A DNA stretch of 64,000 nucleotides, taken from positions 124,001 through 188,000 of the IMG/VR virus record IMGVR_UViG_3300032236_001613; one strand, written 5' to 3'. Below the pieces are notes generated by a model. It saw only the letters and a program-made list of their open reading frames with translations. It did not search any database and was not told the origin of the DNA. The first letter of the stretch is position 1. Each line of letters opens with the position of its first letter. Of the stretch, positions 21,110 to 36,720 are shown piece by piece. A program made the translations under genes and the position numbers.

Positions 21110-21253
21110 ATGTTTACAGTTATTGTACTTTTAGTTATTGCTGGAGTATTAGTATACGTTGGAACACGTAATAAGGGATCTTCTTCGTCAGGTTCATCAT
21201 CAGGCGGTGCTAGTATGCCTGGTGTTGATAATACTAAAGAAAATAAGAATTAA
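21110..21253 (+). CDS. Small membrane protein (47 aa, absent from the ORF track)
   Basis: AAGGAG SD; extended -10 TGTTATAAT at 21081-21089; MFTVIVLLVIAGVLVYVG followed by a Ser/Gly-rich tail. Confidence 0.65.
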   Translation: MFTVIVLLVIAGVLVYVGTRNKGSSSSGSSSGGASMPGVDNTKENKN

Positions 21254-21632
21254 TGGTAGTAAACTCTTAAGTAAAGACGGTCTGGACGGGGAGTGCGACC
21301 CTCCCCCACCTCCACCATAGGTACATTTGATGCGAAAAATATTTGTAGTTGGGTTTTTAATGTTGTTGGCGGTCTTTGGTATATATAAGATTTTAAAATA
21401 TTCAGCTGACCATCCAACACAATGTAATATGTGGCACAGATGTTAAGTGTATCTATGTCGGGGGTGCGTAGTTTCGACAGAGTGTGTAATAGTCAAAGGG
21501 CTACTGGTGAGATGACTGACCTAATCAGCATAAACAAAAATAAATGCTAATGACAGTGTTTATGATGTTGCTATCGCTGCTTAATTGCAGTCTAGTAAAC
21601 AGAGTTTGATCACTCGGTAACAGAACGGTCAG
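21254..21632 (+). ncRNA. ssrA: Circularly permuted (two-piece) tmRNA: acceptor piece ending CCA at 21317, coding piece starting at 21460
   Basis: GGGGGTG (21460-21466) pairs with CACCTCC before ACCA (ends 21317), with the G3:U alanine determinant; T-arm GGGGAG-TGCGACC-CTCCCC; tag frame 21546-21584 reads ANDSVYDVAIAA-stop; the outer ends of both pieces are approximate. Confidence 0.93.
21330..21446 (+). CDS. 38-aa putative membrane peptide inside the tmRNA intervening segment
   Basis: MRKIFVVGFLMLLAVFGIYKILKYSADHPTQCNMWHRC; AGGT upstream; one transmembrane helix. Confidence 0.55.
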   Translation: MRKIFVVGFLMLLAVFGIYKILKYSADHPTQCNMWHRC

Positions 21633-21661
21633 ATAAAGGAGCTTCGGCTCCTTTATTTTTT
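21633..21661 (+). terminator. Intrinsic terminator after the tmRNA coding piece
   Basis: ATAAAGGAGC-TTCG-GCTCCTTTAT followed by a T run. Confidence 0.88.
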
Positions 21662-26212: not shown

Positions 26213-26591
26213 AATTACTTTAATCACACCACCTGACATTTTTCAAAACGATCAAGAAAGTATACTATTTGTTGATCTAACCACCGAAGATCAAGATGCT
26301 GTAATTAAATATTTTACTAACGTTGATTATAGTATTAATATCTATTTTTATAGTGGTGAAGCAAACGTACCTTGGTTAATGCATGCCCTTTCTTGTAGCA
26401 ATTATCGTTATATTAACTTAAATAACATGTCGGCTATAACAAGCTATTTGATAGCTTATATACTGTCAAAACAAGATGTATTTTACTCGATTGAGGATAA
26501 CAGTGTGGCTGAGATTTATAGTCACATTAATTTAAATCGTGTTAATAATGCTATTGAATTTTTAAAGAAGGTTTACAGTGACAACAAATAA
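26202..26591 (+). CDS. Hypothetical phage protein
   Basis: 129-aa ORF overlapping its neighbours. Confidence 0.55.
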   Translation: MPAKITLITPPDIFQNDQESILFVDLTTEDQDAVIKYFTNVDYSINIYFYSGEANVPWLMHALSCSNYRYINLNNMSAITSYLIAYILSKQDVFYSIEDNSVAEIYSHINLNRVNNAIEFLKKVYSDNK

Positions 26592-27822
26592 AAATCATGT
26601 TTGCGACTTTTGTCAAAAGGCAAAAGAAGATGTCGAAAAACTTATTGTCGGCGATAATGCTGCTATTTGTAACGACTGTGTAGAACTATGCATTAGTATC
26701 TTAGATGAAGATAAAGTAAAGAAATTCCCGTTAGGTGATAATAAAAATTTACTAAATCCTGTGCATATTAAAGAATATTTAGATCAGTATGTTATTGGTC
26801 AAGAAAATGCAAAAATTGCTCTTAGTGTAGCAGTATGCCAACATTTTAAAAGAGTGTTCACTGATGTTAAAGACATTGAAATTGAAAAAACTAATGTATT
26901 AATTTTAGGACCTACTGGGTGTGGTAAAACTATGCTAGCTAAAAAGCTAGCAGAATACCTTAACGTACCTTTTGCTATTTGTGATGCAACTGGCTTAACA
27001 GAAGCTGGATACGTGGGCGACGATGTTGAGAGCGTATTAAATCGTTTAATTTCAGCAGCCGACGGCGATATTGATAAAGCTAAACAAGGTATTGTTTATA
27101 TTGACGAAATTGATAAACTAAGTCGTAAAGGTGAAAACACTAGTCTTACACGAGATGTTGGTGGAGAAGGTGTTCAACAAGGTCTACTAAAAATGATCGA
27201 AGGATCAGTAATACGAGTACCTGCTGCAGATAAGCGTAAGCATCCTAGAGGCGACATGATTGAAGTTGATACAAAAAACATATTGTTTATATGTGGCGGT
27301 GCATTTGTTGGGTTAGATAAGATTATTAACCGTAGAAATAAATCAGGTGCAGTTGGATTCGGAGCATCAGTAACGTCAAATAAAGATACATTAGGTTATA
27401 GCGATGTAATTACTAAAGATTTAATTACTTTCGGACTGATACCTGAATTTATCGGACGTTTCGGATTAATTACACATGTTGACGAATTAAGTGTAGACGA
27501 TTTGGTAAAAATACTTAAAGAACCAAAAAACAGTTTAATCAGTCAATATAAACATTTATTTGCTATCGACGGCATTGAATTAGAATTTAAAGACGAAGCA
27601 CTAAAGGAGGTTGCAGAAAAAAGTAAACAACTTCAAACAAATGCTAGAGGCTTAAAAAACATTTTAGAAAAAATCTTATTAAATTATCAATTCGAAGCAA
27701 TGGATCTTGTTCAGCGAGGCCTCAGTAAAATTGTGATAAGTAAAGAAGCAGTTCATGGTAAATCTGCTGAATTAATTTTTAATAAAACAAAGAAGAAGTT
27801 AAATTATGAAAGTAATAGTTAA
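26578..27822 (+). CDS. clpX: ATP-dependent Clp protease ATP-binding subunit ClpX
   Basis: Zn finger CDFC..CNDC; GPTGCGKT; GYVG pore loop; IDEIDK; RKH loop; VGF ClpP-docking loop. Confidence 0.96.
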   Translation: MTTNKNHVCDFCQKAKEDVEKLIVGDNAAICNDCVELCISILDEDKVKKFPLGDNKNLLNPVHIKEYLDQYVIGQENAKIALSVAVCQHFKRVFTDVKDIEIEKTNVLILGPTGCGKTMLAKKLAEYLNVPFAICDATGLTEAGYVGDDVESVLNRLISAADGDIDKAKQGIVYIDEIDKLSRKGENTSLTRDVGGEGVQQGLLKMIEGSVIRVPAADKRKHPRGDMIEVDTKNILFICGGAFVGLDKIINRRNKSGAVGFGASVTSNKDTLGYSDVITKDLITFGLIPEFIGRFGLITHVDELSVDDLVKILKEPKNSLISQYKHLFAIDGIELEFKDEALKEVAEKSKQLQTNARGLKNILEKILLNYQFEAMDLVQRGLSKIVISKEAVHGKSAELIFNKTKKKLNYESNS

Positions 27823-28012
27823 GGATGGTAATATTAACGCTGCTCTAAGAAAGTTCAAAAAGAAAGTTGAAGACAGTGGTATATTGATTGAAGTTTTAGA
27901 AAGACAATACTACGAAAAGCCCACAATTGCAAGACGTCGAGCTAAGGCTGCTGCAAAAGCTCGTTGGCGTAAAAAGCAAAGAGAATTGACAACGCAGGCT
28001 AGATACGATTGA
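27806..28012 (+). CDS. rpsU: 30S ribosomal protein bS21
   Basis: NINAALRKFKKKVEDSGIL..RQYYEKPT signature. Confidence 0.9.
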   Translation: MKVIVKDGNINAALRKFKKKVEDSGILIEVLERQYYEKPTIARRRAKAAAKARWRKKQRELTTQARYD

Positions 28013-28037
28013 CATTTTGCTGTAGTTTTGCTATAGT
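28009..28037 (+). promoter_or_regulatory. Sigma70-type promoter
   Basis: TTGACA-17 nt-TATAGT, with the ATG only 8 nt downstream. Confidence 0.7.
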
Positions 28038-28045
28038 AATTGTCT

Positions 28046-28570
28046 ATGCCAAAACACTTAATGGTCGATTTAGAAACACTATCGGTTGCTCCTGATGCAG
28101 TTATATTGACATTAGGAGCTGTTCATTTTGATCCTTTTGATAAAGGAATTATTAATGAACTTTATATTAAATTTGATCTCGACGATCAGGATCTTTTAAA
28201 AAGATCCATTGATCCACTAACATTAGATTGGTGGGCAAAGCAAGATTCTAAAATAATGGAAGAAGCATTTTCTCCAGATGGAAGAACCAAAGTATCTGAT
28301 GCTATCGATCAGTTCCACAAGTTTGCATGGGGGTGCGATAAATTTTGGAGTCACGGCGCAGTATTTGATCTTATGATCATAGAAAATTTATACCGTCAAC
28401 TAAAAAAATCATTTCCTTGGAACTTTTGGGATTTGAGAGACACAAGAACATTATTTGATCTAGGATTTAAGTCTAACATGACAAAAGACTCTATGCATAA
28501 TGCTCTTGAAGATGCTAAACGGCAGGCTATTGGTGTACAAAACGTTTATGCTCAAATAAAGAGAACATGA
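28046..28570 (+). CDS. DEDD-family 3'-5' exo(ribo)nuclease
   Basis: MVDLETL, SHGAVFD, RDTRT and HNALEDA motifs. Confidence 0.85.
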   Translation: MPKHLMVDLETLSVAPDAVILTLGAVHFDPFDKGIINELYIKFDLDDQDLLKRSIDPLTLDWWAKQDSKIMEEAFSPDGRTKVSDAIDQFHKFAWGCDKFWSHGAVFDLMIIENLYRQLKKSFPWNFWDLRDTRTLFDLGFKSNMTKDSMHNALEDAKRQAIGVQNVYAQIKRT

Positions 28571-29929: not shown

Positions 29930-30460
29930 ATGAATTGGACAGTTCCAAATGTTACGTTTATGTTCCGCGAAGGCGACGAGCCTACTGAAGATGGAGGATG
30001 CCCGATTGGTGGTGAGTTTGTTGCTAAGAATACACAAGACTTGTTTTCCAACAAGCGAGTAGTATTGTTTAGCCTTCCAGGTGCGTTCACTCCCACTTGC
30101 TCTTCAAAACAGCTCCCCGGGTTTGAGGAAGGATATAACGAGTTTAAGAATTTGGGTGTAGATGAAATCTATTGCATTAGTGTTAACGATGCCTTTGTTA
30201 TGAACGAATGGGCGCGACACCTTGGTATTAAGAACGTTAAGGTTATTCCAGATGGTACCGGACAGTTTACTCGTTTAATGGGTCGACTTGTTGATAAGAG
30301 TGCAATTGGGTTTGGTTATCGCAGTCATCGCTATGCTGCTATTGTTAACAATGGTGTAATCGAAAAGATTTTTGATGAACCCGGACGTGAGGACAATTTT
30401 GGCAGCGATCCGTACGGCGAAACTAGCCCAGAAAATGTTCTTGCTTATCTTAAGGGCTAA
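29930..30460 (+). CDS. Peroxiredoxin (Prx5/redoxin type)
   Basis: PGAFTPTCS, SVNDAFVM, RSHRYA. Confidence 0.93.
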   Translation: MNWTVPNVTFMFREGDEPTEDGGCPIGGEFVAKNTQDLFSNKRVVLFSLPGAFTPTCSSKQLPGFEEGYNEFKNLGVDEIYCISVNDAFVMNEWARHLGIKNVKVIPDGTGQFTRLMGRLVDKSAIGFGYRSHRYAAIVNNGVIEKIFDEPGREDNFGSDPYGETSPENVLAYLKG

Positions 30461-30463
30461 GTA

Positions 30464-30667
30464 ATGCGCGATCCGAAACTAGGGTATCATTGGCTTTGGC
30501 TCTATCCATTAGCTGTTTTGTTACTTATAGTTTCGGTATTAGCATTTCCCTTCATTAAATTTATTGACGCTTATCAAAAGTATCAGCATAATAAGCATAT
30601 GCAACGGATTTATAAAAAGAATCCAGATATTAAAGATTTATCTATTTTGGCAGGTACAAAGAAGTAG
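30464..30667 (+). CDS. Small membrane protein
   Basis: Single hydrophobic helix, 67 aa. Confidence 0.5.
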   Translation: MRDPKLGYHWLWLYPLAVLLLIVSVLAFPFIKFIDAYQKYQHNKHMQRIYKKNPDIKDLSILAGTKK

Positions 30668-30696
30668 TTGACAATTAGGTAAAAGTTAATTATAAT
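30668..30696 (+). promoter_or_regulatory. Perfect sigma70 consensus promoter
   Basis: TTGACA-17 nt-TATAAT. Confidence 0.88.
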
Positions 30697-30710
30697 ATCT
30701 GCATAGTTTG

Positions 30711-30826
30711 AAATTAAGGATAGGTACAGCAATTCATAATCAATATGGAACGCTAATACATTGTATTAGATAGAGTGGTTTCGACAGTTCCGCTCGATAA
30801 ACATAAAAAGTAGATAACTATCCTGT
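30711..30826 (+). ncRNA. Candidate Y-like/TROVE-associated structured RNA, copy 1
   Basis: AGGATAG (30717-23) pairs with CTATCCT (30818-24); GTACAGCAA follows the 5' arm; internal hairpins include a TTCGAC-containing loop. Confidence 0.5.
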
Positions 30827-30830
30827 TTTT

Positions 30831-30904
30831 AAATTAGGTTAAGTTCCGCAACTAAAAATCGCTCAATGGCTGTCTACTAGGACGTTAAACTAGTTTTAAC
30901 CTGT
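30831..30904 (+). ncRNA. Candidate Y-like/TROVE-associated structured RNA, copy 2
   Basis: AGGTTAA (30836-42) pairs with TTAACCT (30896-902); GTTCCGCAA follows the 5' arm; same flanks as copy 1. Confidence 0.5.
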
Positions 30905-30914
30905 AAGGAGAATA

Positions 30915-32318
30915 ATGATGAATATGTTTGCAGAAGCAGTTAAAGAAGTACAAATCGAAACTCGTACCATTAACGGTATGAAAACTTTCGATTCCAGCAA
31001 GAGTCGTCTCGTTGACTTGTTCTTTGCAATCGGTGCAAGCCGTGGAAAAGACTTAAGCGCCGAATTCCACCGTGCTCTTGCTGAAGATAAAACGCTAGCA
31101 CTTCGCTTGCTCATGTGGGCTCGCGATGTTCGCGGTGGGGCAGGCGAGCGAGATGTTGTTCGCACTATCTTGCTTAGTCTGGAAAAGAAAGATCCAGATG
31201 TGTTGAAGCGTGTGCTTCCGCACCTAGCTGAGTTCGGCCGCTGGGATGACTTGTTGATTTTCGAGCATGATCCGGAAATCAAGAGCATGGCGTTTGATCT
31301 CATCCACGCAGCTCTTAAGGCCGGCAACGGTCTTTGTGCTAAGTGGATGCCTCGTAAGGGCGAGAAGGCGGCAGAGTTGCGTAATGCACTTGGTATGAGT
31401 CCTAAGACTTATCGCAAAACTCTAGTCAATTTGACTAAGGTTGTTGAGCAGAATATGTGTGCTAACGACTGGACTAACATTAACTACAACCACGTTCCTA
31501 GCGTGGCTGCTAGTCGTTACCAGAAAGCGTTTAAGAAGCACGACCCAGAGGGTTATGAAGCGTATGCTTCTAAACTCGAAAAGGGTGAAGCTAAGATTAA
31601 TGCTGGTGCGGTTTATCCGTATGACATTATCAAGGCACACAATGCAGGCGGTAATGTAAAGGTTGTTACTGCGCAATGGGAAGCATTGCCTAACTACATC
31701 GGTGATGAGTTAATCCTTCCGATGGTGGACGTTTCAGGCTCTATGTCTGTGCCAATTGGTAGCAACAAGAACCTGCAATGTATCGACGTTGCAGTTAGCT
31801 TAGGTTTATATCTTGCTGATAAGAATACCGGTCCGTTTAAGGATATGTTCTTAACTTTCTCGAGTGATCCGGAGCTACAAATTCTTAAGGGCGACCTCAT
31901 TAAGAAAATTGCACAGCTACAAAAAGCTGATTGGGCTATGAGCACCGATCTTAATAAAGCATTTGAGTTAATTCTCAATTACGCTGTTAAGGGCAAAGTT
32001 GCAACTAAGGACATGCCTCAGTATGTGCTCATCTTGTCAGATATGGAGTTTAATCAGTGCACACGACACAATGACAGTGCTATGCAAATGATCGTACGTA
32101 AGTACGAAGCTGCCGGCTACGAGGTTCCGAATATTATTTTCTGGAATCTAGCAGCACGTAGCGGAAACGTTCCAGTTAAGTATGACAAGAAAGGTACTGC
32201 ATTAATTTCCGGATTCAGCCCGGCAATCATGACTTCGGTTCTAGCAGCTAAGAGTATTACTCCGATAGATGTGATGCTTGAGACTCTAAACAAGCCACGT
32301 TACGCTGTTATCAGCTAA
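30915..32318 (+). CDS. TROVE-like/vWA domain protein (DUF2828 / Ro60-like)
   Basis: WARDVRGGAGER, GRWDDLL, AKWMPR, VPSVA; C-terminal vWA with the MIDAS motif DVSGSM and SDMEF. Confidence 0.85.
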   Translation: MMNMFAEAVKEVQIETRTINGMKTFDSSKSRLVDLFFAIGASRGKDLSAEFHRALAEDKTLALRLLMWARDVRGGAGERDVVRTILLSLEKKDPDVLKRVLPHLAEFGRWDDLLIFEHDPEIKSMAFDLIHAALKAGNGLCAKWMPRKGEKAAELRNALGMSPKTYRKTLVNLTKVVEQNMCANDWTNINYNHVPSVAASRYQKAFKKHDPEGYEAYASKLEKGEAKINAGAVYPYDIIKAHNAGGNVKVVTAQWEALPNYIGDELILPMVDVSGSMSVPIGSNKNLQCIDVAVSLGLYLADKNTGPFKDMFLTFSSDPELQILKGDLIKKIAQLQKADWAMSTDLNKAFELILNYAVKGKVATKDMPQYVLILSDMEFNQCTRHNDSAMQMIVRKYEAAGYEVPNIIFWNLAARSGNVPVKYDKKGTALISGFSPAIMTSVLAAKSITPIDVMLETLNKPRYAVIS

Positions 32319-32323
32319 CATAG

Positions 32324-32347
32324 AAAAGGCCCGTAAGGGCCTTTTTT
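32324..32347. terminator. Bidirectional intrinsic terminator
   Basis: AAAAGGCCC-GTAA-GGGCCTTTTTT between convergent genes. Confidence 0.88.
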
Positions 32348-32353
32348 ATTGTA

Positions 32354-33238
32354 TTAAAATCCTTTTGTATACCAATCTTCAGTTGTTTTATAGATAGTTT
32401 GAAAATGTTGTGCGCTTTCAAACTCTTCTTGACTTCTTACATAAAATCCAAGATCTTCTCGAAAGGGAGTTCCGGCAAAATCAGGCCAACTAGGTTCTCT
32501 AACTAAATGCATGATATACGGAAATCCTCTGACTGAGTCCTCTCCTAATTCATAATCTATAACAGTTTTGTATAATTTTTCAATATGAGGTCCATCTGAA
32601 TGCCTCCATAGATGCGGCGGAACATACAATCTATTAAAAAGTTCGTCAGTATTAACTAACATATTTTTCAGAATAGAGAAAAAGGATTCTGCATTTTGCT
32701 CTGATAAAACTGCATGCCTATCACAATATCCCGTATGATGTTGCCCGTCTGGAAGCCAAATATATTCCGGTTCCAATATATCCATAGGAGGATGAGGAGA
32801 TAAGAAATTAAAATCAGTGCGTGTTAAAACTATTCTGTCATATTGACTAAAAATATTTTCCTTCCTAATATTGTACCATAGATACCATTTAAGAAATGTT
32901 TGTATTGCTCCAAATCCTCCATCCCAATTATTTAAAGGATGAAATGCATTTCCTGGCAACATCGCAAATTTTTTCCAGTAATTTGGGTCAGCATCTGGAA
33001 AATCCTTTTGCCGAGCATACTCTATAGCATCAAACCAATTCTGAAACTTAGGAGAAAACCAAATATACTTTGAATTTTTCCAAAATGGATCTGTAAAATC
33101 CAAGTTGGATCGAGGTTCCATACATATTGCTAAATCAGCATTTAAACTATCTAATACATTCTTTTTAAAATTATTCCATGTTACTTCGTGCTCGCGTCCT
33201 CTTACATTCACTACACATACTAATGTTTTTCTATTCAT
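32354..33238 (-). CDS. Hypothetical glycosyltransferase-like protein
   Basis: YDRIVLTRTDF and GYCDRHAV motifs resemble those of ORF 1053. Confidence 0.5.
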   Translation of the reverse strand: MNRKTLVCVVNVRGREHEVTWNNFKKNVLDSLNADLAICMEPRSNLDFTDPFWKNSKYIWFSPKFQNWFDAIEYARQKDFPDADPNYWKKFAMLPGNAFHPLNNWDGGFGAIQTFLKWYLWYNIRKENIFSQYDRIVLTRTDFNFLSPHPPMDILEPEYIWLPDGQHHTGYCDRHAVLSEQNAESFFSILKNMLVNTDELFNRLYVPPHLWRHSDGPHIEKLYKTVIDYELGEDSVRGFPYIMHLVREPSWPDFAGTPFREDLGFYVRSQEEFESAQHFQTIYKTTEDWYTKGF

Positions 33239-36199: not shown

Positions 36200-36720
36200 C
36201 AACTAAGGCACACTCACTGGCATAAACATAGGCACATCAATCAACGCTTAAGCTCGCACCGGCTAATTTCGGGTGCCTATGATAACCGGACAACAAAGTC
36301 GCGGGGACAGAAATCCTGTGTGTTGACAGGAACTCAGCCACTACCCCTTCAGGGATGATGATGGAATATGCCTATATAATCCGTTTGGCTAAGATAAAAA
36401 TACTAAGGCTCTTTTGATCGCGGCTCTGTGAAAAAGATACAACCGCAAATACTACATATCTGCTAACATCGGTGTGTAGCGTTCCCGTTAGATTGAAGTT
36501 AGGAATAAGAAGTACAGGCTAACCGCTTCTGCGCAGCAATGCAATTTCCGAATGTTAGTGACCAACGAACTCAGGTAATAATCGTTAGAAAATCTTCGCC
36601 CTGTTTTGGGCGAAGTATGACATTAAAATCTAGGTAATCAATTCACTCTTAATAATTTTTCTCTTTCTTATAAAAGGTGATGAGCGCGAGCGAAATCACG
36701 GGCGAATCCTTTCGCCCCTT
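36200..36720 (+). ncRNA. Candidate large structured ncRNA (family unassigned)
   Basis: About 520 nt with no ORF, more GC-rich than its flanks, many hairpins (e.g. CATAGGCAC/GTGCCTATG, TCCTGT/ACAGGA, CTTCGCCC/GGGCGAAG). Confidence 0.5.

What the first reader, a model, noticed from the sequence alone, without database searches (positions are those of the whole stretch)
30668..32347. Two tandem stem-loop RNAs between a perfect promoter and a Ro60/TROVE-like gene: candidate phage Y-RNA system
Seen: TTGACA-17-TATAAT is followed by a ~210-nt ORF-free leader holding two elements with the same layout, AAATT(A)-AGGnTAn-GTnCnGCAA-[variable]-nTAnCCT-GT. The closing stems differ in sequence yet each pairs perfectly (AGGATAG/CTATCCT; AGGTTAA/TTAACCT), which is compensatory variation. 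Copy 1 has inner hairpins CTAATAC/GTATTAG and GAGTGG/CCGCTC with a TTCGAC (T-loop-like) loop. The TROVE/vWA gene and a terminator follow. Established: Ro60/Rsr proteins bind Y RNAs through a terminal stem next to a conserved motif; bacterial Yrl RNAs are encoded beside rsr and can mimic tRNA. Inference: these are ligands or autoregulatory sites for the DUF2828-type protein, whose RNA partners I do not know to be described.
Basis: partly seen in the sequence, partly recalled or inferred. Interest (0 to 1): 0.75.

Follow-up and report, generated by a model that had tools for sequence, protein, structure and literature searches.

The report
Phage Ro60-like gene with Y-like RNAs
The untranslated leader of a jumbo-phage gene for a Ro60-like ring protein carries two copies of a conserved RNA module (a short closing stem next to the sequence CAGCAA) that recurs beside this gene family in very different phages, and is most likely the protein's own small-RNA partner and translational control site.

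Summary
A perfect TTGACA-17-TATAAT promoter (30668-30696) drives a 218-nt ORF-free leader. The leader holds two modules (30717-30824 and 30836-30902) with one layout: a 7-bp closing stem, then N-U-A/U-C-A/C-GCAA, a variable insert, the 3' arm, then GU.

A covariance model built from relatives finds only these two sites in the 64-kb window. In 85 related metagenomic phage loci it gives 118 hits, all on the gene's strand, in 84 loci. The nearest hit usually ends about 12 nt before the start codon. Six of the seven stem pairs covary.

The same module flanks homologous genes in Felixounavirus, Listeria, Staphylococcus, Campylobacter, Ralstonia, Klebsiella, Aeromonas and mycobacterial phages. Some copies, one of them in this phage's own tRNA array, carry a full tRNA-like T/acceptor/D domain and hit Rfam YrlA below threshold.

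The protein (DUF2828+DUF7788) models confidently, and its 13 best structural matches are all Ro60/TROVE proteins.

Verdict: a Y-RNA-like system of a divergent phage Ro60 family, with a different motif (CAGCAA rather than CGAA). The window's two copies lack the tRNA-like domain. The second copy abuts the ribosome-binding site, so it may act as an autoregulatory operator. Binding, processing and regulation are inferred, not shown. This is a new variant of a known kind.

The parts
30668..30696 (+). Sigma-70-type promoter, TTGACA-17-TATAAT. The transcription start is predicted near 30703.
   Evidence: It is the only 12/12 match in 27-36 kb. Equivalent consensus-like promoters precede the module arrays in L003, L004 and L006. 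The start site is inferred, not mapped.
30717..30824 (+). Module 1 (108 nt). P1 is AGGATAG (30717-30723) with CTATCCT (30818-30824). The motif GTACAGCAA lies at 30724-30732. Inner hairpins lie at 30733-30749, 30753-30769 and 30773-30795 (loop TTTCGACAGTT). An A-rich 3' strand lies at 30796-30817, followed by the tail GTTT.
   Evidence: Model R1 scores it 30.3 bits, E = 5e-5, and it was not in the training set. Fold. Homologous modules in relatives keep the last hairpin with different stems (GTGAG/CTCAC, GAGAG/CTCTC, CTGG/CCAG) and a loop that starts TTTCGA or TTTGGA (read directly).
30836..30902 (+). Module 2 (67 nt). P1 is AGGTTAA (30836-30842) with TTAACCT (30896-30902). The motif GTTCCGCAA lies at 30843-30851. 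The 3' arm ends 2 nt before the Shine-Dalgarno sequence, so this is a candidate translational operator.
   Evidence: Model R1 scores it 42.9 bits, E = 3e-8. It is conserved in position and signature in all seven leaders of alignment A1. In 81 of 84 related loci the nearest module ends within 40 nt of the ATG, median 12 nt.
30905..30910 (+). Shine-Dalgarno sequence AAGGAG.
   Evidence: Read directly. It lies 7 nt before the ATG at 30918, which aligns with the single ATG of relatives.
30915..32318 (+). Gene for a Ro60-like protein: an N-terminal helical-repeat (DUF2828) part and a C-terminal vWA (DUF7788) part with an intact MIDAS motif (D272, S274, S276, T344, D376). The real start is probably 30918.
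   Evidence: Pfam DUF7788 6e-51 and DUF2828 7e-33. PHROG 850 'RNA-binding protein', 3e-153. AF2 pLDDT 93.7. Foldseek's top 13 hits are all Ro60/TROVE. Invariant residues.
32324..32347 (+). Intrinsic terminator AAAAGGCCC-GTAA-GGGCCTTTT-TT, shared with the convergent gene at 32354-33238 (-).
   Evidence: Read directly. Only weak terminator-type Rfam matches occur there.

Best explanation
The window comes from a 328-kb freshwater jumbo phage. A strong host-type promoter transcribes two Y-RNA-like modules and, on the same RNA, the gene for a divergent Ro60-family ring protein (DUF2828/DUF7788).

Each module is a 7-bp terminal stem (P1, AGR-NNNN with NNNN-YCU). Directly after the 5' arm comes a conserved single strand, N-U-A/U-C-A/C-G-C-A-A, then a variable insert, and after the 3' arm a G-U tail.

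I propose that the protein recognises the base of P1 together with the CAGCAA strand. This would parallel Ro60 binding the terminal stem and the GGUCCGA/GNCGAA strand of Y and YrlA RNAs.

Module 1, and three further modules in the phage's tRNA array (one with a complete tRNA-like domain), would be the protein's RNA partners. They would form an RNP that acts on host RNA-decay or defence machinery. Known parallels are the phiLo Ro60-Yrl complex, which binds PNPase, and Bas63 gp130, which counters the Ppl defence.

Module 2 uses the same recognition signature but ends 2 nt before the Shine-Dalgarno sequence. Once free protein exceeds its RNA partners it would bind there and block the ribosome, giving translational autoregulation by mimicry.

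Shown: the sequence and structure conservation, the covariation, the linkage to the gene family, the protein fold, and the kinship of some modules with YrlA.
Inferred: protein-RNA binding, release of the modules as discrete RNAs, autoregulation, and the cellular target.
For: Promoter and anatomy.

RNA family:
- The leader alignment shows module 2 conserved down to 54% protein identity. Module stems differ but stay complementary.
- A strict pattern scan is enriched 31-fold upstream on the gene's strand.
- Model R1 gives 118 of 118 hits on the + strand, in 84 of 85 loci. The nearest hit ends a median of 12 nt before the ATG.
- P1 covariation: 6 of 7 pairs change on both sides. The score is 0.65 against 0.16 for shuffles and 0.09 or less for slid partners. 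RNAalifold predicts P1 independently.

Breadth:
- Model hits occur beside the homologous gene in Listeria, mycobacterial, Ralstonia, Campylobacter and Felixounavirus phages, none of them in the training set.
- Pattern hits also occur in Staphylococcus, Klebsiella and Aeromonas LAh_8 phages.

Link to Y RNAs:
- Modules with T arm, acceptor-like hairpin and D arm.
- Rfam YrlA hits of 26-44 bits, including one in the same genome at G000 198448-198560.
- Rfam aligns the YrlA 5' CGAAUG region to UAACAGCAA.

Protein: Ro60 fold and invariant MIDAS residues.

Precedents: PMC12135203 (two Yrl RNAs upstream of a phage Ro60 gene, with gel-shift binding and PNPase complexes); PMC4201824 (YrlA next to Ro60 in bacteria and 22 phages); bioRxiv 10.1101/2024.10.10.617714 (Felixounavirus gp130 is Ro60-like and counters Ppl).

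Operator idea: in Vibrio Schizotequatrovirus phages a single minimal module encloses the SD, and its 3' arm contains the start codon.
Against: - No experiment or RNA-seq shows the RNAs or the binding. The one metatranscriptome that holds this DNA gives only a 151-nt contig that starts upstream of the promoter, which is uninformative.
- The leader is not unusually stable (z = -0.48).
- The window's modules have no Rfam hit and no tRNA-like domain.
- The motif differs from the canonical Ro60-binding motif, so the binding mode cannot be transferred with confidence.
- In many phages the modules lie downstream of the gene or in tRNA arrays with none at the SD. Autoregulation is therefore not general. 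The position next to the SD may simply reflect tight packing in one transcript.
- No module was found in Erwinia Eneladusvirus or Aeromonas phiAS5.
- The modules used for the first covariation count were selected for a perfect stem. That count is circular; the model-based search corrects this only partly.
Confidence: 0.72

Rival explanations
1. The modules are purely cis-acting leader elements, such as mRNA stabilisers, processing sites or a translational operator. They have no life as separate small RNAs and no role as trans-acting partners of the protein.
For: In the window and in 81 of 84 related loci a module sits directly before the SD. In Vibrio phages the module encloses the SD and the start codon. 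The modules are co-transcribed from one promoter.
Against: The same modules lie downstream of the gene or between tRNA genes, far from any start codon. This is so in this genome (43 kb away) and in Felixounavirus, Staphylococcus, mycobacterial, Ralstonia and Klebsiella phages. Some are full YrlA-like tRNA mimics, and YrlA RNAs are stable ncRNAs in bacteria (PMC4201824).
Confidence: 0.1
2. The modules are tRNA-derived relics or punctuation elements. They are read by host tRNA-processing enzymes or by another phage factor, and they travel with tRNA arrays. Their nearness to the DUF2828 gene reflects shared genomic neighbourhood, not binding.
For: The modules sit in tRNA arrays with tRNA-like spacing. 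The DUF2828 gene is often embedded in or next to tRNA clusters. Some modules contain T and D arms.
Against: Minimal modules of 34-60 nt have no tRNA features, yet they keep P1 and CAGCAA. The invariant CAGCAA points to a sequence-specific reader. Linkage to the gene holds in loci without nearby tRNAs, such as the window itself and Staphylococcus L096. The architecture matches Ro60-Y RNA systems, where binding is established (PMC4201824, PMC12135203).
Confidence: 0.12
3. The two stems are chance inverted repeats in an AT-rich leader and have no function.
For: The fold energy is not better than shuffled sequence. 7-bp complements are common in AT-rich DNA.
Against: Covariation, strand bias (118 of 118 hits), position bias and recurrence across unrelated phage families all argue against chance.
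Confidence: 0.01

Closest known systems
Bacterial and phage YrlA (Y RNA-like) RNAs bound by Rsr/Ro60 (Rfam RF02553; Chen et al. 2014, PMC4201824)
   Same: They are encoded next to, and on the same strand as, a Ro60-fold gene, often in several copies. The 5' and 3' ends form a terminal stem, with a conserved short motif on the 5' strand just inside it. In some family members here, including one in this genome, the insert is a permuted tRNA-like domain (T arm, acceptor-like hairpin, D arm) that Rfam YrlA detects at E about 1e-5 to 3e-7.
   Different: The motif is N-U-A/U-C-A/C-GCAA instead of GNCGAAN0-1G. All hits are below the Rfam gathering score (at most 44 bits against 69). The window's two copies get no hit at all and lack the tRNA-like domain. 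Many members are minimal (34-60 nt). The partner protein is Pfam DUF2828/DUF7788, not TROVE.
Thermus phage phiLo Ro60 with Yrl1 and Yrl2 (Hu et al. 2025, PMC12135203; PDB 9kop, 9l5y)
   Same: A phage Ro60-fold protein has two Y-like RNAs placed in tandem directly upstream of its gene. The stem / large internal loop / motif architecture is shared. The phiLo structure is among the best structural matches of the window's protein.
   Different: phiLo has a TROVE-annotated protein and a CGAA motif. Its RNAs were chosen by motif and RNAfold, without comparative support. No operator role was proposed. Here nothing has been tested biochemically.
Felixounavirus Bas63 gp130 (PhageMaP preprint, 10.1101/2024.10.10.617714)
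   Different: That work named no RNA. Here four concrete modules are located in the REP5 tRNA array (L092 3719-3785, 3886-3944, 4289-4358, 4378-4503). The last is YrlA-like and overlaps a 131-nt feature annotated 'tRNA-Thr'. The anti-Ppl function has been tested only for Bas63.
Translational operators that mimic the protein's main RNA ligand (ribosomal-protein operators, T4 RegA/gp32, MS2 coat protein)
   Same: A copy of the protein's recognition element sits at the ribosome-binding site of its own mRNA.
   Different: The resemblance is purely positional and by motif. Repression has not been tested.

Membership tests
Y RNA / YrlA (Rfam RF02553) | Encoded close to, and on the same strand as, a Ro60-family gene | tested here: met
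   The two modules lie 13-198 nt upstream of the gene on the same strand. All 118 model hits in the relatives are on the gene's strand.
Y RNA / YrlA (Rfam RF02553) | Terminal stem formed by the 5' and 3' ends | tested here: met
   P1 has 7 bp. Six of the seven pairs change on both sides, and 99.6% of cells are paired in 110 distinct model-found sequences.
Y RNA / YrlA (Rfam RF02553) | Conserved Ro60-binding motif GNCGAAN0-1G (bacteria) or GGUCCGA (vertebrates) on the 5' strand | tested here: not met
   The conserved motif in that position is GUACAGCAA / GUUCCGCAA. Rfam aligns it to the CGAAUG region of YrlA but with different letters.
Y RNA / YrlA (Rfam RF02553) | tRNA-like domain (T arm, acceptor-like hairpin, D arm) | tested here: not met
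   The window's modules have no ARAGORN hit and no Rfam hit at E of 10 or less. The only candidate feature is a hairpin with a UUUCGA loop. The domain is present in sister modules: G000 198448-198560 and modules in L050, L033, L021, L092, L093 and L094.
Y RNA / YrlA (Rfam RF02553) | Score at or above the Rfam gathering threshold (69 bits) | tested here: not met
   The window gives no hit. The best sister modules score 26-44 bits.
Y RNA / YrlA (Rfam RF02553) | Bound by the Ro60-family protein in vivo or in vitro | not testable with these tools
   This needs EMSA, RIP or CLIP.
Ro60 / TROVE proteins | Ring of helical (HEAT-like) repeats closed by a vWA domain | tested here: met
   The AF2 model has pLDDT 93.7 and pTM 0.91. 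The top 13 Foldseek PDB matches are all Ro60/Rsr/phage Ro60 over about 500 aligned columns, TM 0.47-0.64.
Ro60 / TROVE proteins | Match to Pfam TROVE (PF05731) | tested here: not met
   Only DUF7788, DUF2828 and a weak VWA_2 match appear, even at E of 10 or less. The profile-to-PDB sequence search reaches TROVE/Ro60 chains only at E 0.04-0.4, and only in the vWA part.
Ro60 / TROVE proteins | MIDAS motif (DxSxS...T...D) in the vWA domain | tested here: met
   D272, S274, S276, T344 and D376 are invariant in 55 diverse homologues.
Autoregulatory translational operator | A copy of the protein's RNA recognition element overlaps or abuts the ribosome-binding site of its own mRNA | tested here: met
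   The P1 3' arm of module 2 ends at 30902 and the SD is at 30905-30910. The same placement occurs in 81 of 84 relatives. In Vibrio phages the module encloses the SD and the AUG.
Autoregulatory translational operator | The protein represses translation of its own mRNA | not testable with these tools
   This needs reporter fusions or toeprinting.

The most novel reading that the evidence does not exclude
The 'P1 + CAGCAA' modules define an undescribed, very widespread class of phage small RNAs. They would be the cognate partners of the DUF2828 branch of Ro60 proteins, which occurs in at least 709 deposited phage genomes, from Felixounavirus and Listeria P100-like phages to jumbo phages. The modules range from 34-nt minimal stem-loops to full tRNA mimics, and they are currently unannotated or mis-annotated as tRNAs or ORFs. 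Together with the protein they would form an RNP that phages use against host RNA-decay or defence systems, such as Ppl, with a built-in mimicry operator that sets the protein-to-RNA ratio.
Probability: 0.45. Interest if true: 0.75.

Novelty: new variant of a known kind. Interest (0 to 1): 0.62.

Why it matters
Ro60-Y RNA particles are a classic but still poorly understood RNA-surveillance system. Phage versions have only begun to be studied: one structure in 2025 and one genetic hit against the Ppl defence.

This finding gives the large DUF2828 branch, annotated as 'hypothetical' or 'RNA-binding protein' in hundreds of phages, a concrete and testable RNA ligand. The ligand has a simple signature, which allows three things:
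- the RNAs can be annotated in cultured model phages such as Felixounavirus/Bas63, Listeria P100-like, Campylobacter and mycobacteriophage cluster L;
- existing annotations can be corrected, for example a 131-nt 'tRNA-Thr', an ORF start inside a module and a 29-aa 'ORF' over a module;
- direct experiments on binding, on autoregulation and on whether the RNAs are needed for counter-defence can be designed.

It also shows that the Ro60-binding motif has diverged (CAGCAA against CGAA) while the architecture stayed the same.

Tried and rejected
- Thermodynamics: the leader's minimum free energy is ordinary (z = -0.48), so stability alone is no evidence.
- Rfam on the window at E of 10 or less and at gathering thresholds: nothing in the leader.
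- ARAGORN: no tRNA in the window.
- megablast of the locus against deposited phages: no match.
- phmmer of the protein against PDB: nothing. The profile search gave only sub-significant TROVE/Ro60 vWA matches.
- Expression: only DNA metagenomes and one lake metatranscriptome hold the sequence. The transcriptome contigs (151 nt; one spans 30628-30778 and so starts upstream of the promoter) cannot show a transcript start or discrete RNAs.
- Alternative pairing AACAG/CUGUU, suggested by the way Rfam YrlA aligns to L050: rejected as the general structure. It crosses P1, has no covariation, and cannot form in modules with a CCGCAA motif or a GAAA tail.
- First covariation count: the modules had been selected for perfect stems, so the percentage paired is circular. 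It was repeated on model-found hits and backed by strand and position statistics.
- No module was found upstream or downstream of the homologue in Erwinia phage pEa_SNUABM_19 (best model hit E = 0.55) or in Aeromonas phiAS5.
- RNAalifold on module-1-type sequences recovered only P1, because MAFFT misaligns the inner hairpin. The inner-hairpin covariation is therefore read by eye only.
- No protein-RNA complex prediction was run, because the tool gives no verdict for RNA partners.
- The supplementary tables of Chen et al. 2014 (the list of 22 phages) and the 2020 Annual Review were not available. I therefore cannot exclude that some DUF2828-type mycobacteriophage RNAs were already listed there as YrlA.
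Full report
**What is in the sequence**

- TTGACA (30668-30673), 17 nt, TATAAT (30691-30696) is the only perfect promoter match in 27-36 kb.
- The 218 nt up to the gene carry no + strand ORF of 40 aa or more.
- Module 1 spans 30717-30824 and module 2 spans 30836-30902. Both have the same layout: a 7-nt arm (AGGATAG or AGGTTAA), then GTACAGCAA or GTTCCGCAA, an insert, the exact complement of the arm, then GT.
- Module 2 ends 2 nt before the Shine-Dalgarno AAGGAG (30905-30910).
- The gene runs to 32318. Relatives align with the second ATG, at 30918.
- A GC-rich hairpin terminator follows at 32324-32347.

Folding energy alone says nothing, since the leader's z-score is -0.48. Rfam and ARAGORN find nothing in the leader.

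**The genome**

The window is part of a 328,068-bp virus record with 37% GC and 27 tRNA genes, so it is a jumbo phage. The DNA runs that hold it, and the one lake metatranscriptome, are metagenomes, most of them labelled freshwater. There is no close deposited relative at the DNA level.

**The protein**

- Pfam gives DUF2828 plus DUF7788, not TROVE. PHROG 850 is named 'RNA-binding protein'.
- tblastn finds homologues in 709 deposited phage genomes, all below 60% identity. The hosts include Escherichia, Mycobacterium, Salmonella, Vibrio, Listeria, Staphylococcus, Campylobacter, Enterococcus and Bacillus. Some are annotated 'Ro-like RNA binding protein'.
- An AlphaFold model from 55 diverse homologues is confident (pLDDT 93.7, pTM 0.91).
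- Its 13 best PDB matches are all Ro60 family: Xenopus and human Ro60, Deinococcus Rsr and Thermus phage phiLo Ro60. They align over the full length, at E 2e-10 to 3e-6 and TM 0.47-0.64. Generic vWA domains follow far behind.
- The MIDAS residues are invariant.

The protein is therefore a divergent Ro60-fold protein. By sequence it lies outside Pfam TROVE.

**The RNA family**

I aligned the leaders of six IMG/VR relatives with 94-54% protein identity. Module 2 is conserved in all of them, directly before the SD. Further modules upstream have stems that differ but stay complementary, such as AGGATGG/CCATCCT, GGATGAT/ATCATCC and AGAATCG/CGATTCT.

In 88 related loci, a strict pattern (7-bp stem with at most one G-U, 2-3 nt, C[AC]GCA[AT], then a G-initial tail after the 3' arm) occurs 248 times in the 124 kb upstream on the gene's strand. 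It occurs 44 times in the other 676 kb, a 31-fold enrichment. Loci hold 1 to 6 tandem modules, 34-275 nt long.

That set was chosen for perfect stems. To avoid circularity I built a covariance model from 57 short modules and searched again.
- Over 85 loci it gives 118 hits at E of 0.01 or less. All are on the gene's strand, in 84 loci; 114 lie upstream of the gene. The nearest hit ends a median of 12 nt before the start codon.
- On these hits P1 is paired in 99.6% of cells, and 6 of 7 pairs change on both sides. The covariation score is 0.65, against 0.16 for shuffles and 0.09 or less for slid partners (compare).
- In the 64-kb window the model finds only the two leader modules. Module 1, which was not in the training set, scores 30.3 bits at E = 5e-5.

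**Breadth**

The same signature flanks the homologous gene in unrelated cultured phages, none of which were used for training.
- Upstream of the gene: Listeria LMTA-57 (three modules), Campylobacter F371 (two) and Aeromonas LAh_8 (four).
- Downstream of the gene, often running into a tRNA array: Felixounavirus REP5 (four), Ralstonia RSP15 (two), mycobacteriophage Clautastrophe (three), Staphylococcus S-CoN_Ph12 (three) and Klebsiella FBKp34 (four).
- None found: Erwinia pEa_SNUABM_19 and Aeromonas phiAS5.

**Link to Y RNAs**

Eight of the 191 unique modules in the metagenomic loci, and one module each in REP5, RSP15 and Clautastrophe, carry a canonical T arm (for example GTGGG-TTCGAAT-CCCAT), a closed acceptor-like hairpin and a D arm (GCTC-AGTGGTA-GAGC) between the CAGCAA motif and the 3' arm. 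This is exactly the permuted tRNA-like architecture of bacterial YrlA (PMC4201824).

Rfam YrlA hits these modules at 26-44 bits, with E down to 3e-7. That is below the gathering score of 69.

The window's own genome has such an RNA at 198448-198560, scoring 44.1 bits. It also has two minimal modules at 197543-197598 and 199230-199288. Each of the three sits between two tRNA genes, with tRNA-like spacing. The leader modules are thus paralogues of a bona fide YrlA-like RNA in the same phage.

In the Rfam alignment, the YrlA 5' region that contains the proposed Ro60-binding motif GNCGAA falls on UAACAGCAA. The position is the same but the letters differ.

**Mechanism**

By analogy with Ro60-Y RNA, where binding goes through the terminal stem and its 5'-strand motif (PMC4201824), I infer that the DUF2828 protein reads the conserved base of P1 (AGR/YCU plus the flanking G-U) and the CAGCAA strand. 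The closest precedent is Thermus phage phiLo. It has two Yrl RNAs directly upstream of the Ro60 gene, which bind the protein in gel shifts and assemble with host PNPase.

- Modules in tRNA arrays would be released by tRNA processing.
- Module 1's 5' end would be set by the promoter, about 14 nt upstream.
- Module 2 abuts the SD, and this placement is kept in 81 of 84 relatives. In Vibrio Schizotequatrovirus phages a single minimal module even encloses the SD and the start codon. This fits a mimicry operator for translational autoregulation.
- The weakness of the operator idea is that phages with downstream modules have nothing at the SD, so the idea is not general.

**Module 1 in detail**

Its last hairpin is GAGTGG/CCGCTC with the loop TTTCGACAGTT. 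The hairpin recurs in homologous modules with other stems (GTGAG/CTCAC, GAGAG/CTCTC, CTGG/CCAG, CAGG/CCTG) and a loop that begins TTTCGA or TTTGGA (read by eye). There is no D arm.

**Novelty**

The general arrangement of a phage Ro60 homologue with adjacent Y-like RNAs has been known since 2014 and was shown biochemically in 2025. I could not find the following in Rfam or in the searchable literature:
- the CAGCAA-type module as the signature RNA of the DUF2828 branch;
- its size range from 34-nt stem-loops to tRNA mimics;
- its arrays of up to six copies;
- its systematic placement at the ribosome-binding site.

One caveat applies. The phage table of Chen et al. 2014 was not available, so some mycobacteriophage members may already have been listed there as YrlA.

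I rate this a new variant of a known kind. Confidence is high that the RNA family is real and tied to the gene. Confidence in binding is moderate to high, and confidence in autoregulation is moderate to low.

Noticed in passing
window 21211-21658 (+): A phage-encoded two-piece (permuted) tmRNA: Rfam tmRNA_permuted at 120.2 bits and beta_tmRNA at 89 bits (GA 84). ARAGORN did not report it. It hints at a betaproteobacterial host.
   Followed up: no
window 36251-36391 (+); also L004 4885-5030: Polynucleobacter-1 RNA motif (RF01718, 91.2 and 96.7 bits), an orphan structured RNA. Here it sits in a jumbo phage a few kb or less downstream of the Ro60-like gene, next to a DUF454 gene.
   Followed up: no
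outside the window: G000:C1 197543-197598, 198448-198560, 199230-199288; possibly 69331-69459: Three more CAGCAA modules lie in the phage's tRNA array, each between two tRNA genes. The middle one is a full YrlA-like tRNA mimic (Rfam YrlA 44.1 bits). A possible sixth module, with a CGAATGT stem containing one G-U pair, lies in an intergenic gap.
   Followed up: partly
window 28009-28570 (+): A near-consensus promoter (TTGACA-17-TATAGT with TG) precedes a gene for an Rv2179c-like 3'-5' exoribonuclease, 2.3 kb upstream of the Ro60-like gene. Bacterial Ro60-Y RNA tethers a 3'-5' exoribonuclease (PNPase), so a functional link is conceivable, but I did not test it. A ClpX-like ATPase gene lies at 26578-27822 and a redoxin gene at 29930-30460.
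   Followed up: no
L092 (Escherichia phage REP5) 4324-4454; L103 (Aeromonas phage LAh_8) 499-600; L096 (Staphylococcus phage S-CoN_Ph12) 3519-3608: These are likely mis-annotations caused by the modules. The 131-nt 'tRNA-Thr' overlaps a YrlA-like module (L092 4378-4503). The RefSeq start of the LAh_8 'RNA-binding protein' lies inside a module, about 100 nt upstream of where homology begins. A 29-aa 'hypothetical protein' lies over a module.
   Followed up: partly
L095 (Listeria phage LMTA-57) 473-1024: A ROOL RNA match (RF03087, 88.5 bits, just below GA 99.1) lies about 1 kb upstream of the module array and the DUF2828 gene. An RtcB-type 'tRNA-splicing ligase' gene lies 1.3 kb downstream.
   Followed up: no
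L098 1964-2006 and L102 about 531-573 (Vibrio Schizotequatrovirus phages): A single minimal module (GACATT - TTACAGCAA - insert containing the SD - AATGTC) has a 3' arm that contains the start codon of the DUF2828 gene, behind a TTTACA-17-TATAAT promoter. This is the clearest operator-like arrangement seen. The two phages have the same stem, so there is no covariation.
   Followed up: partly
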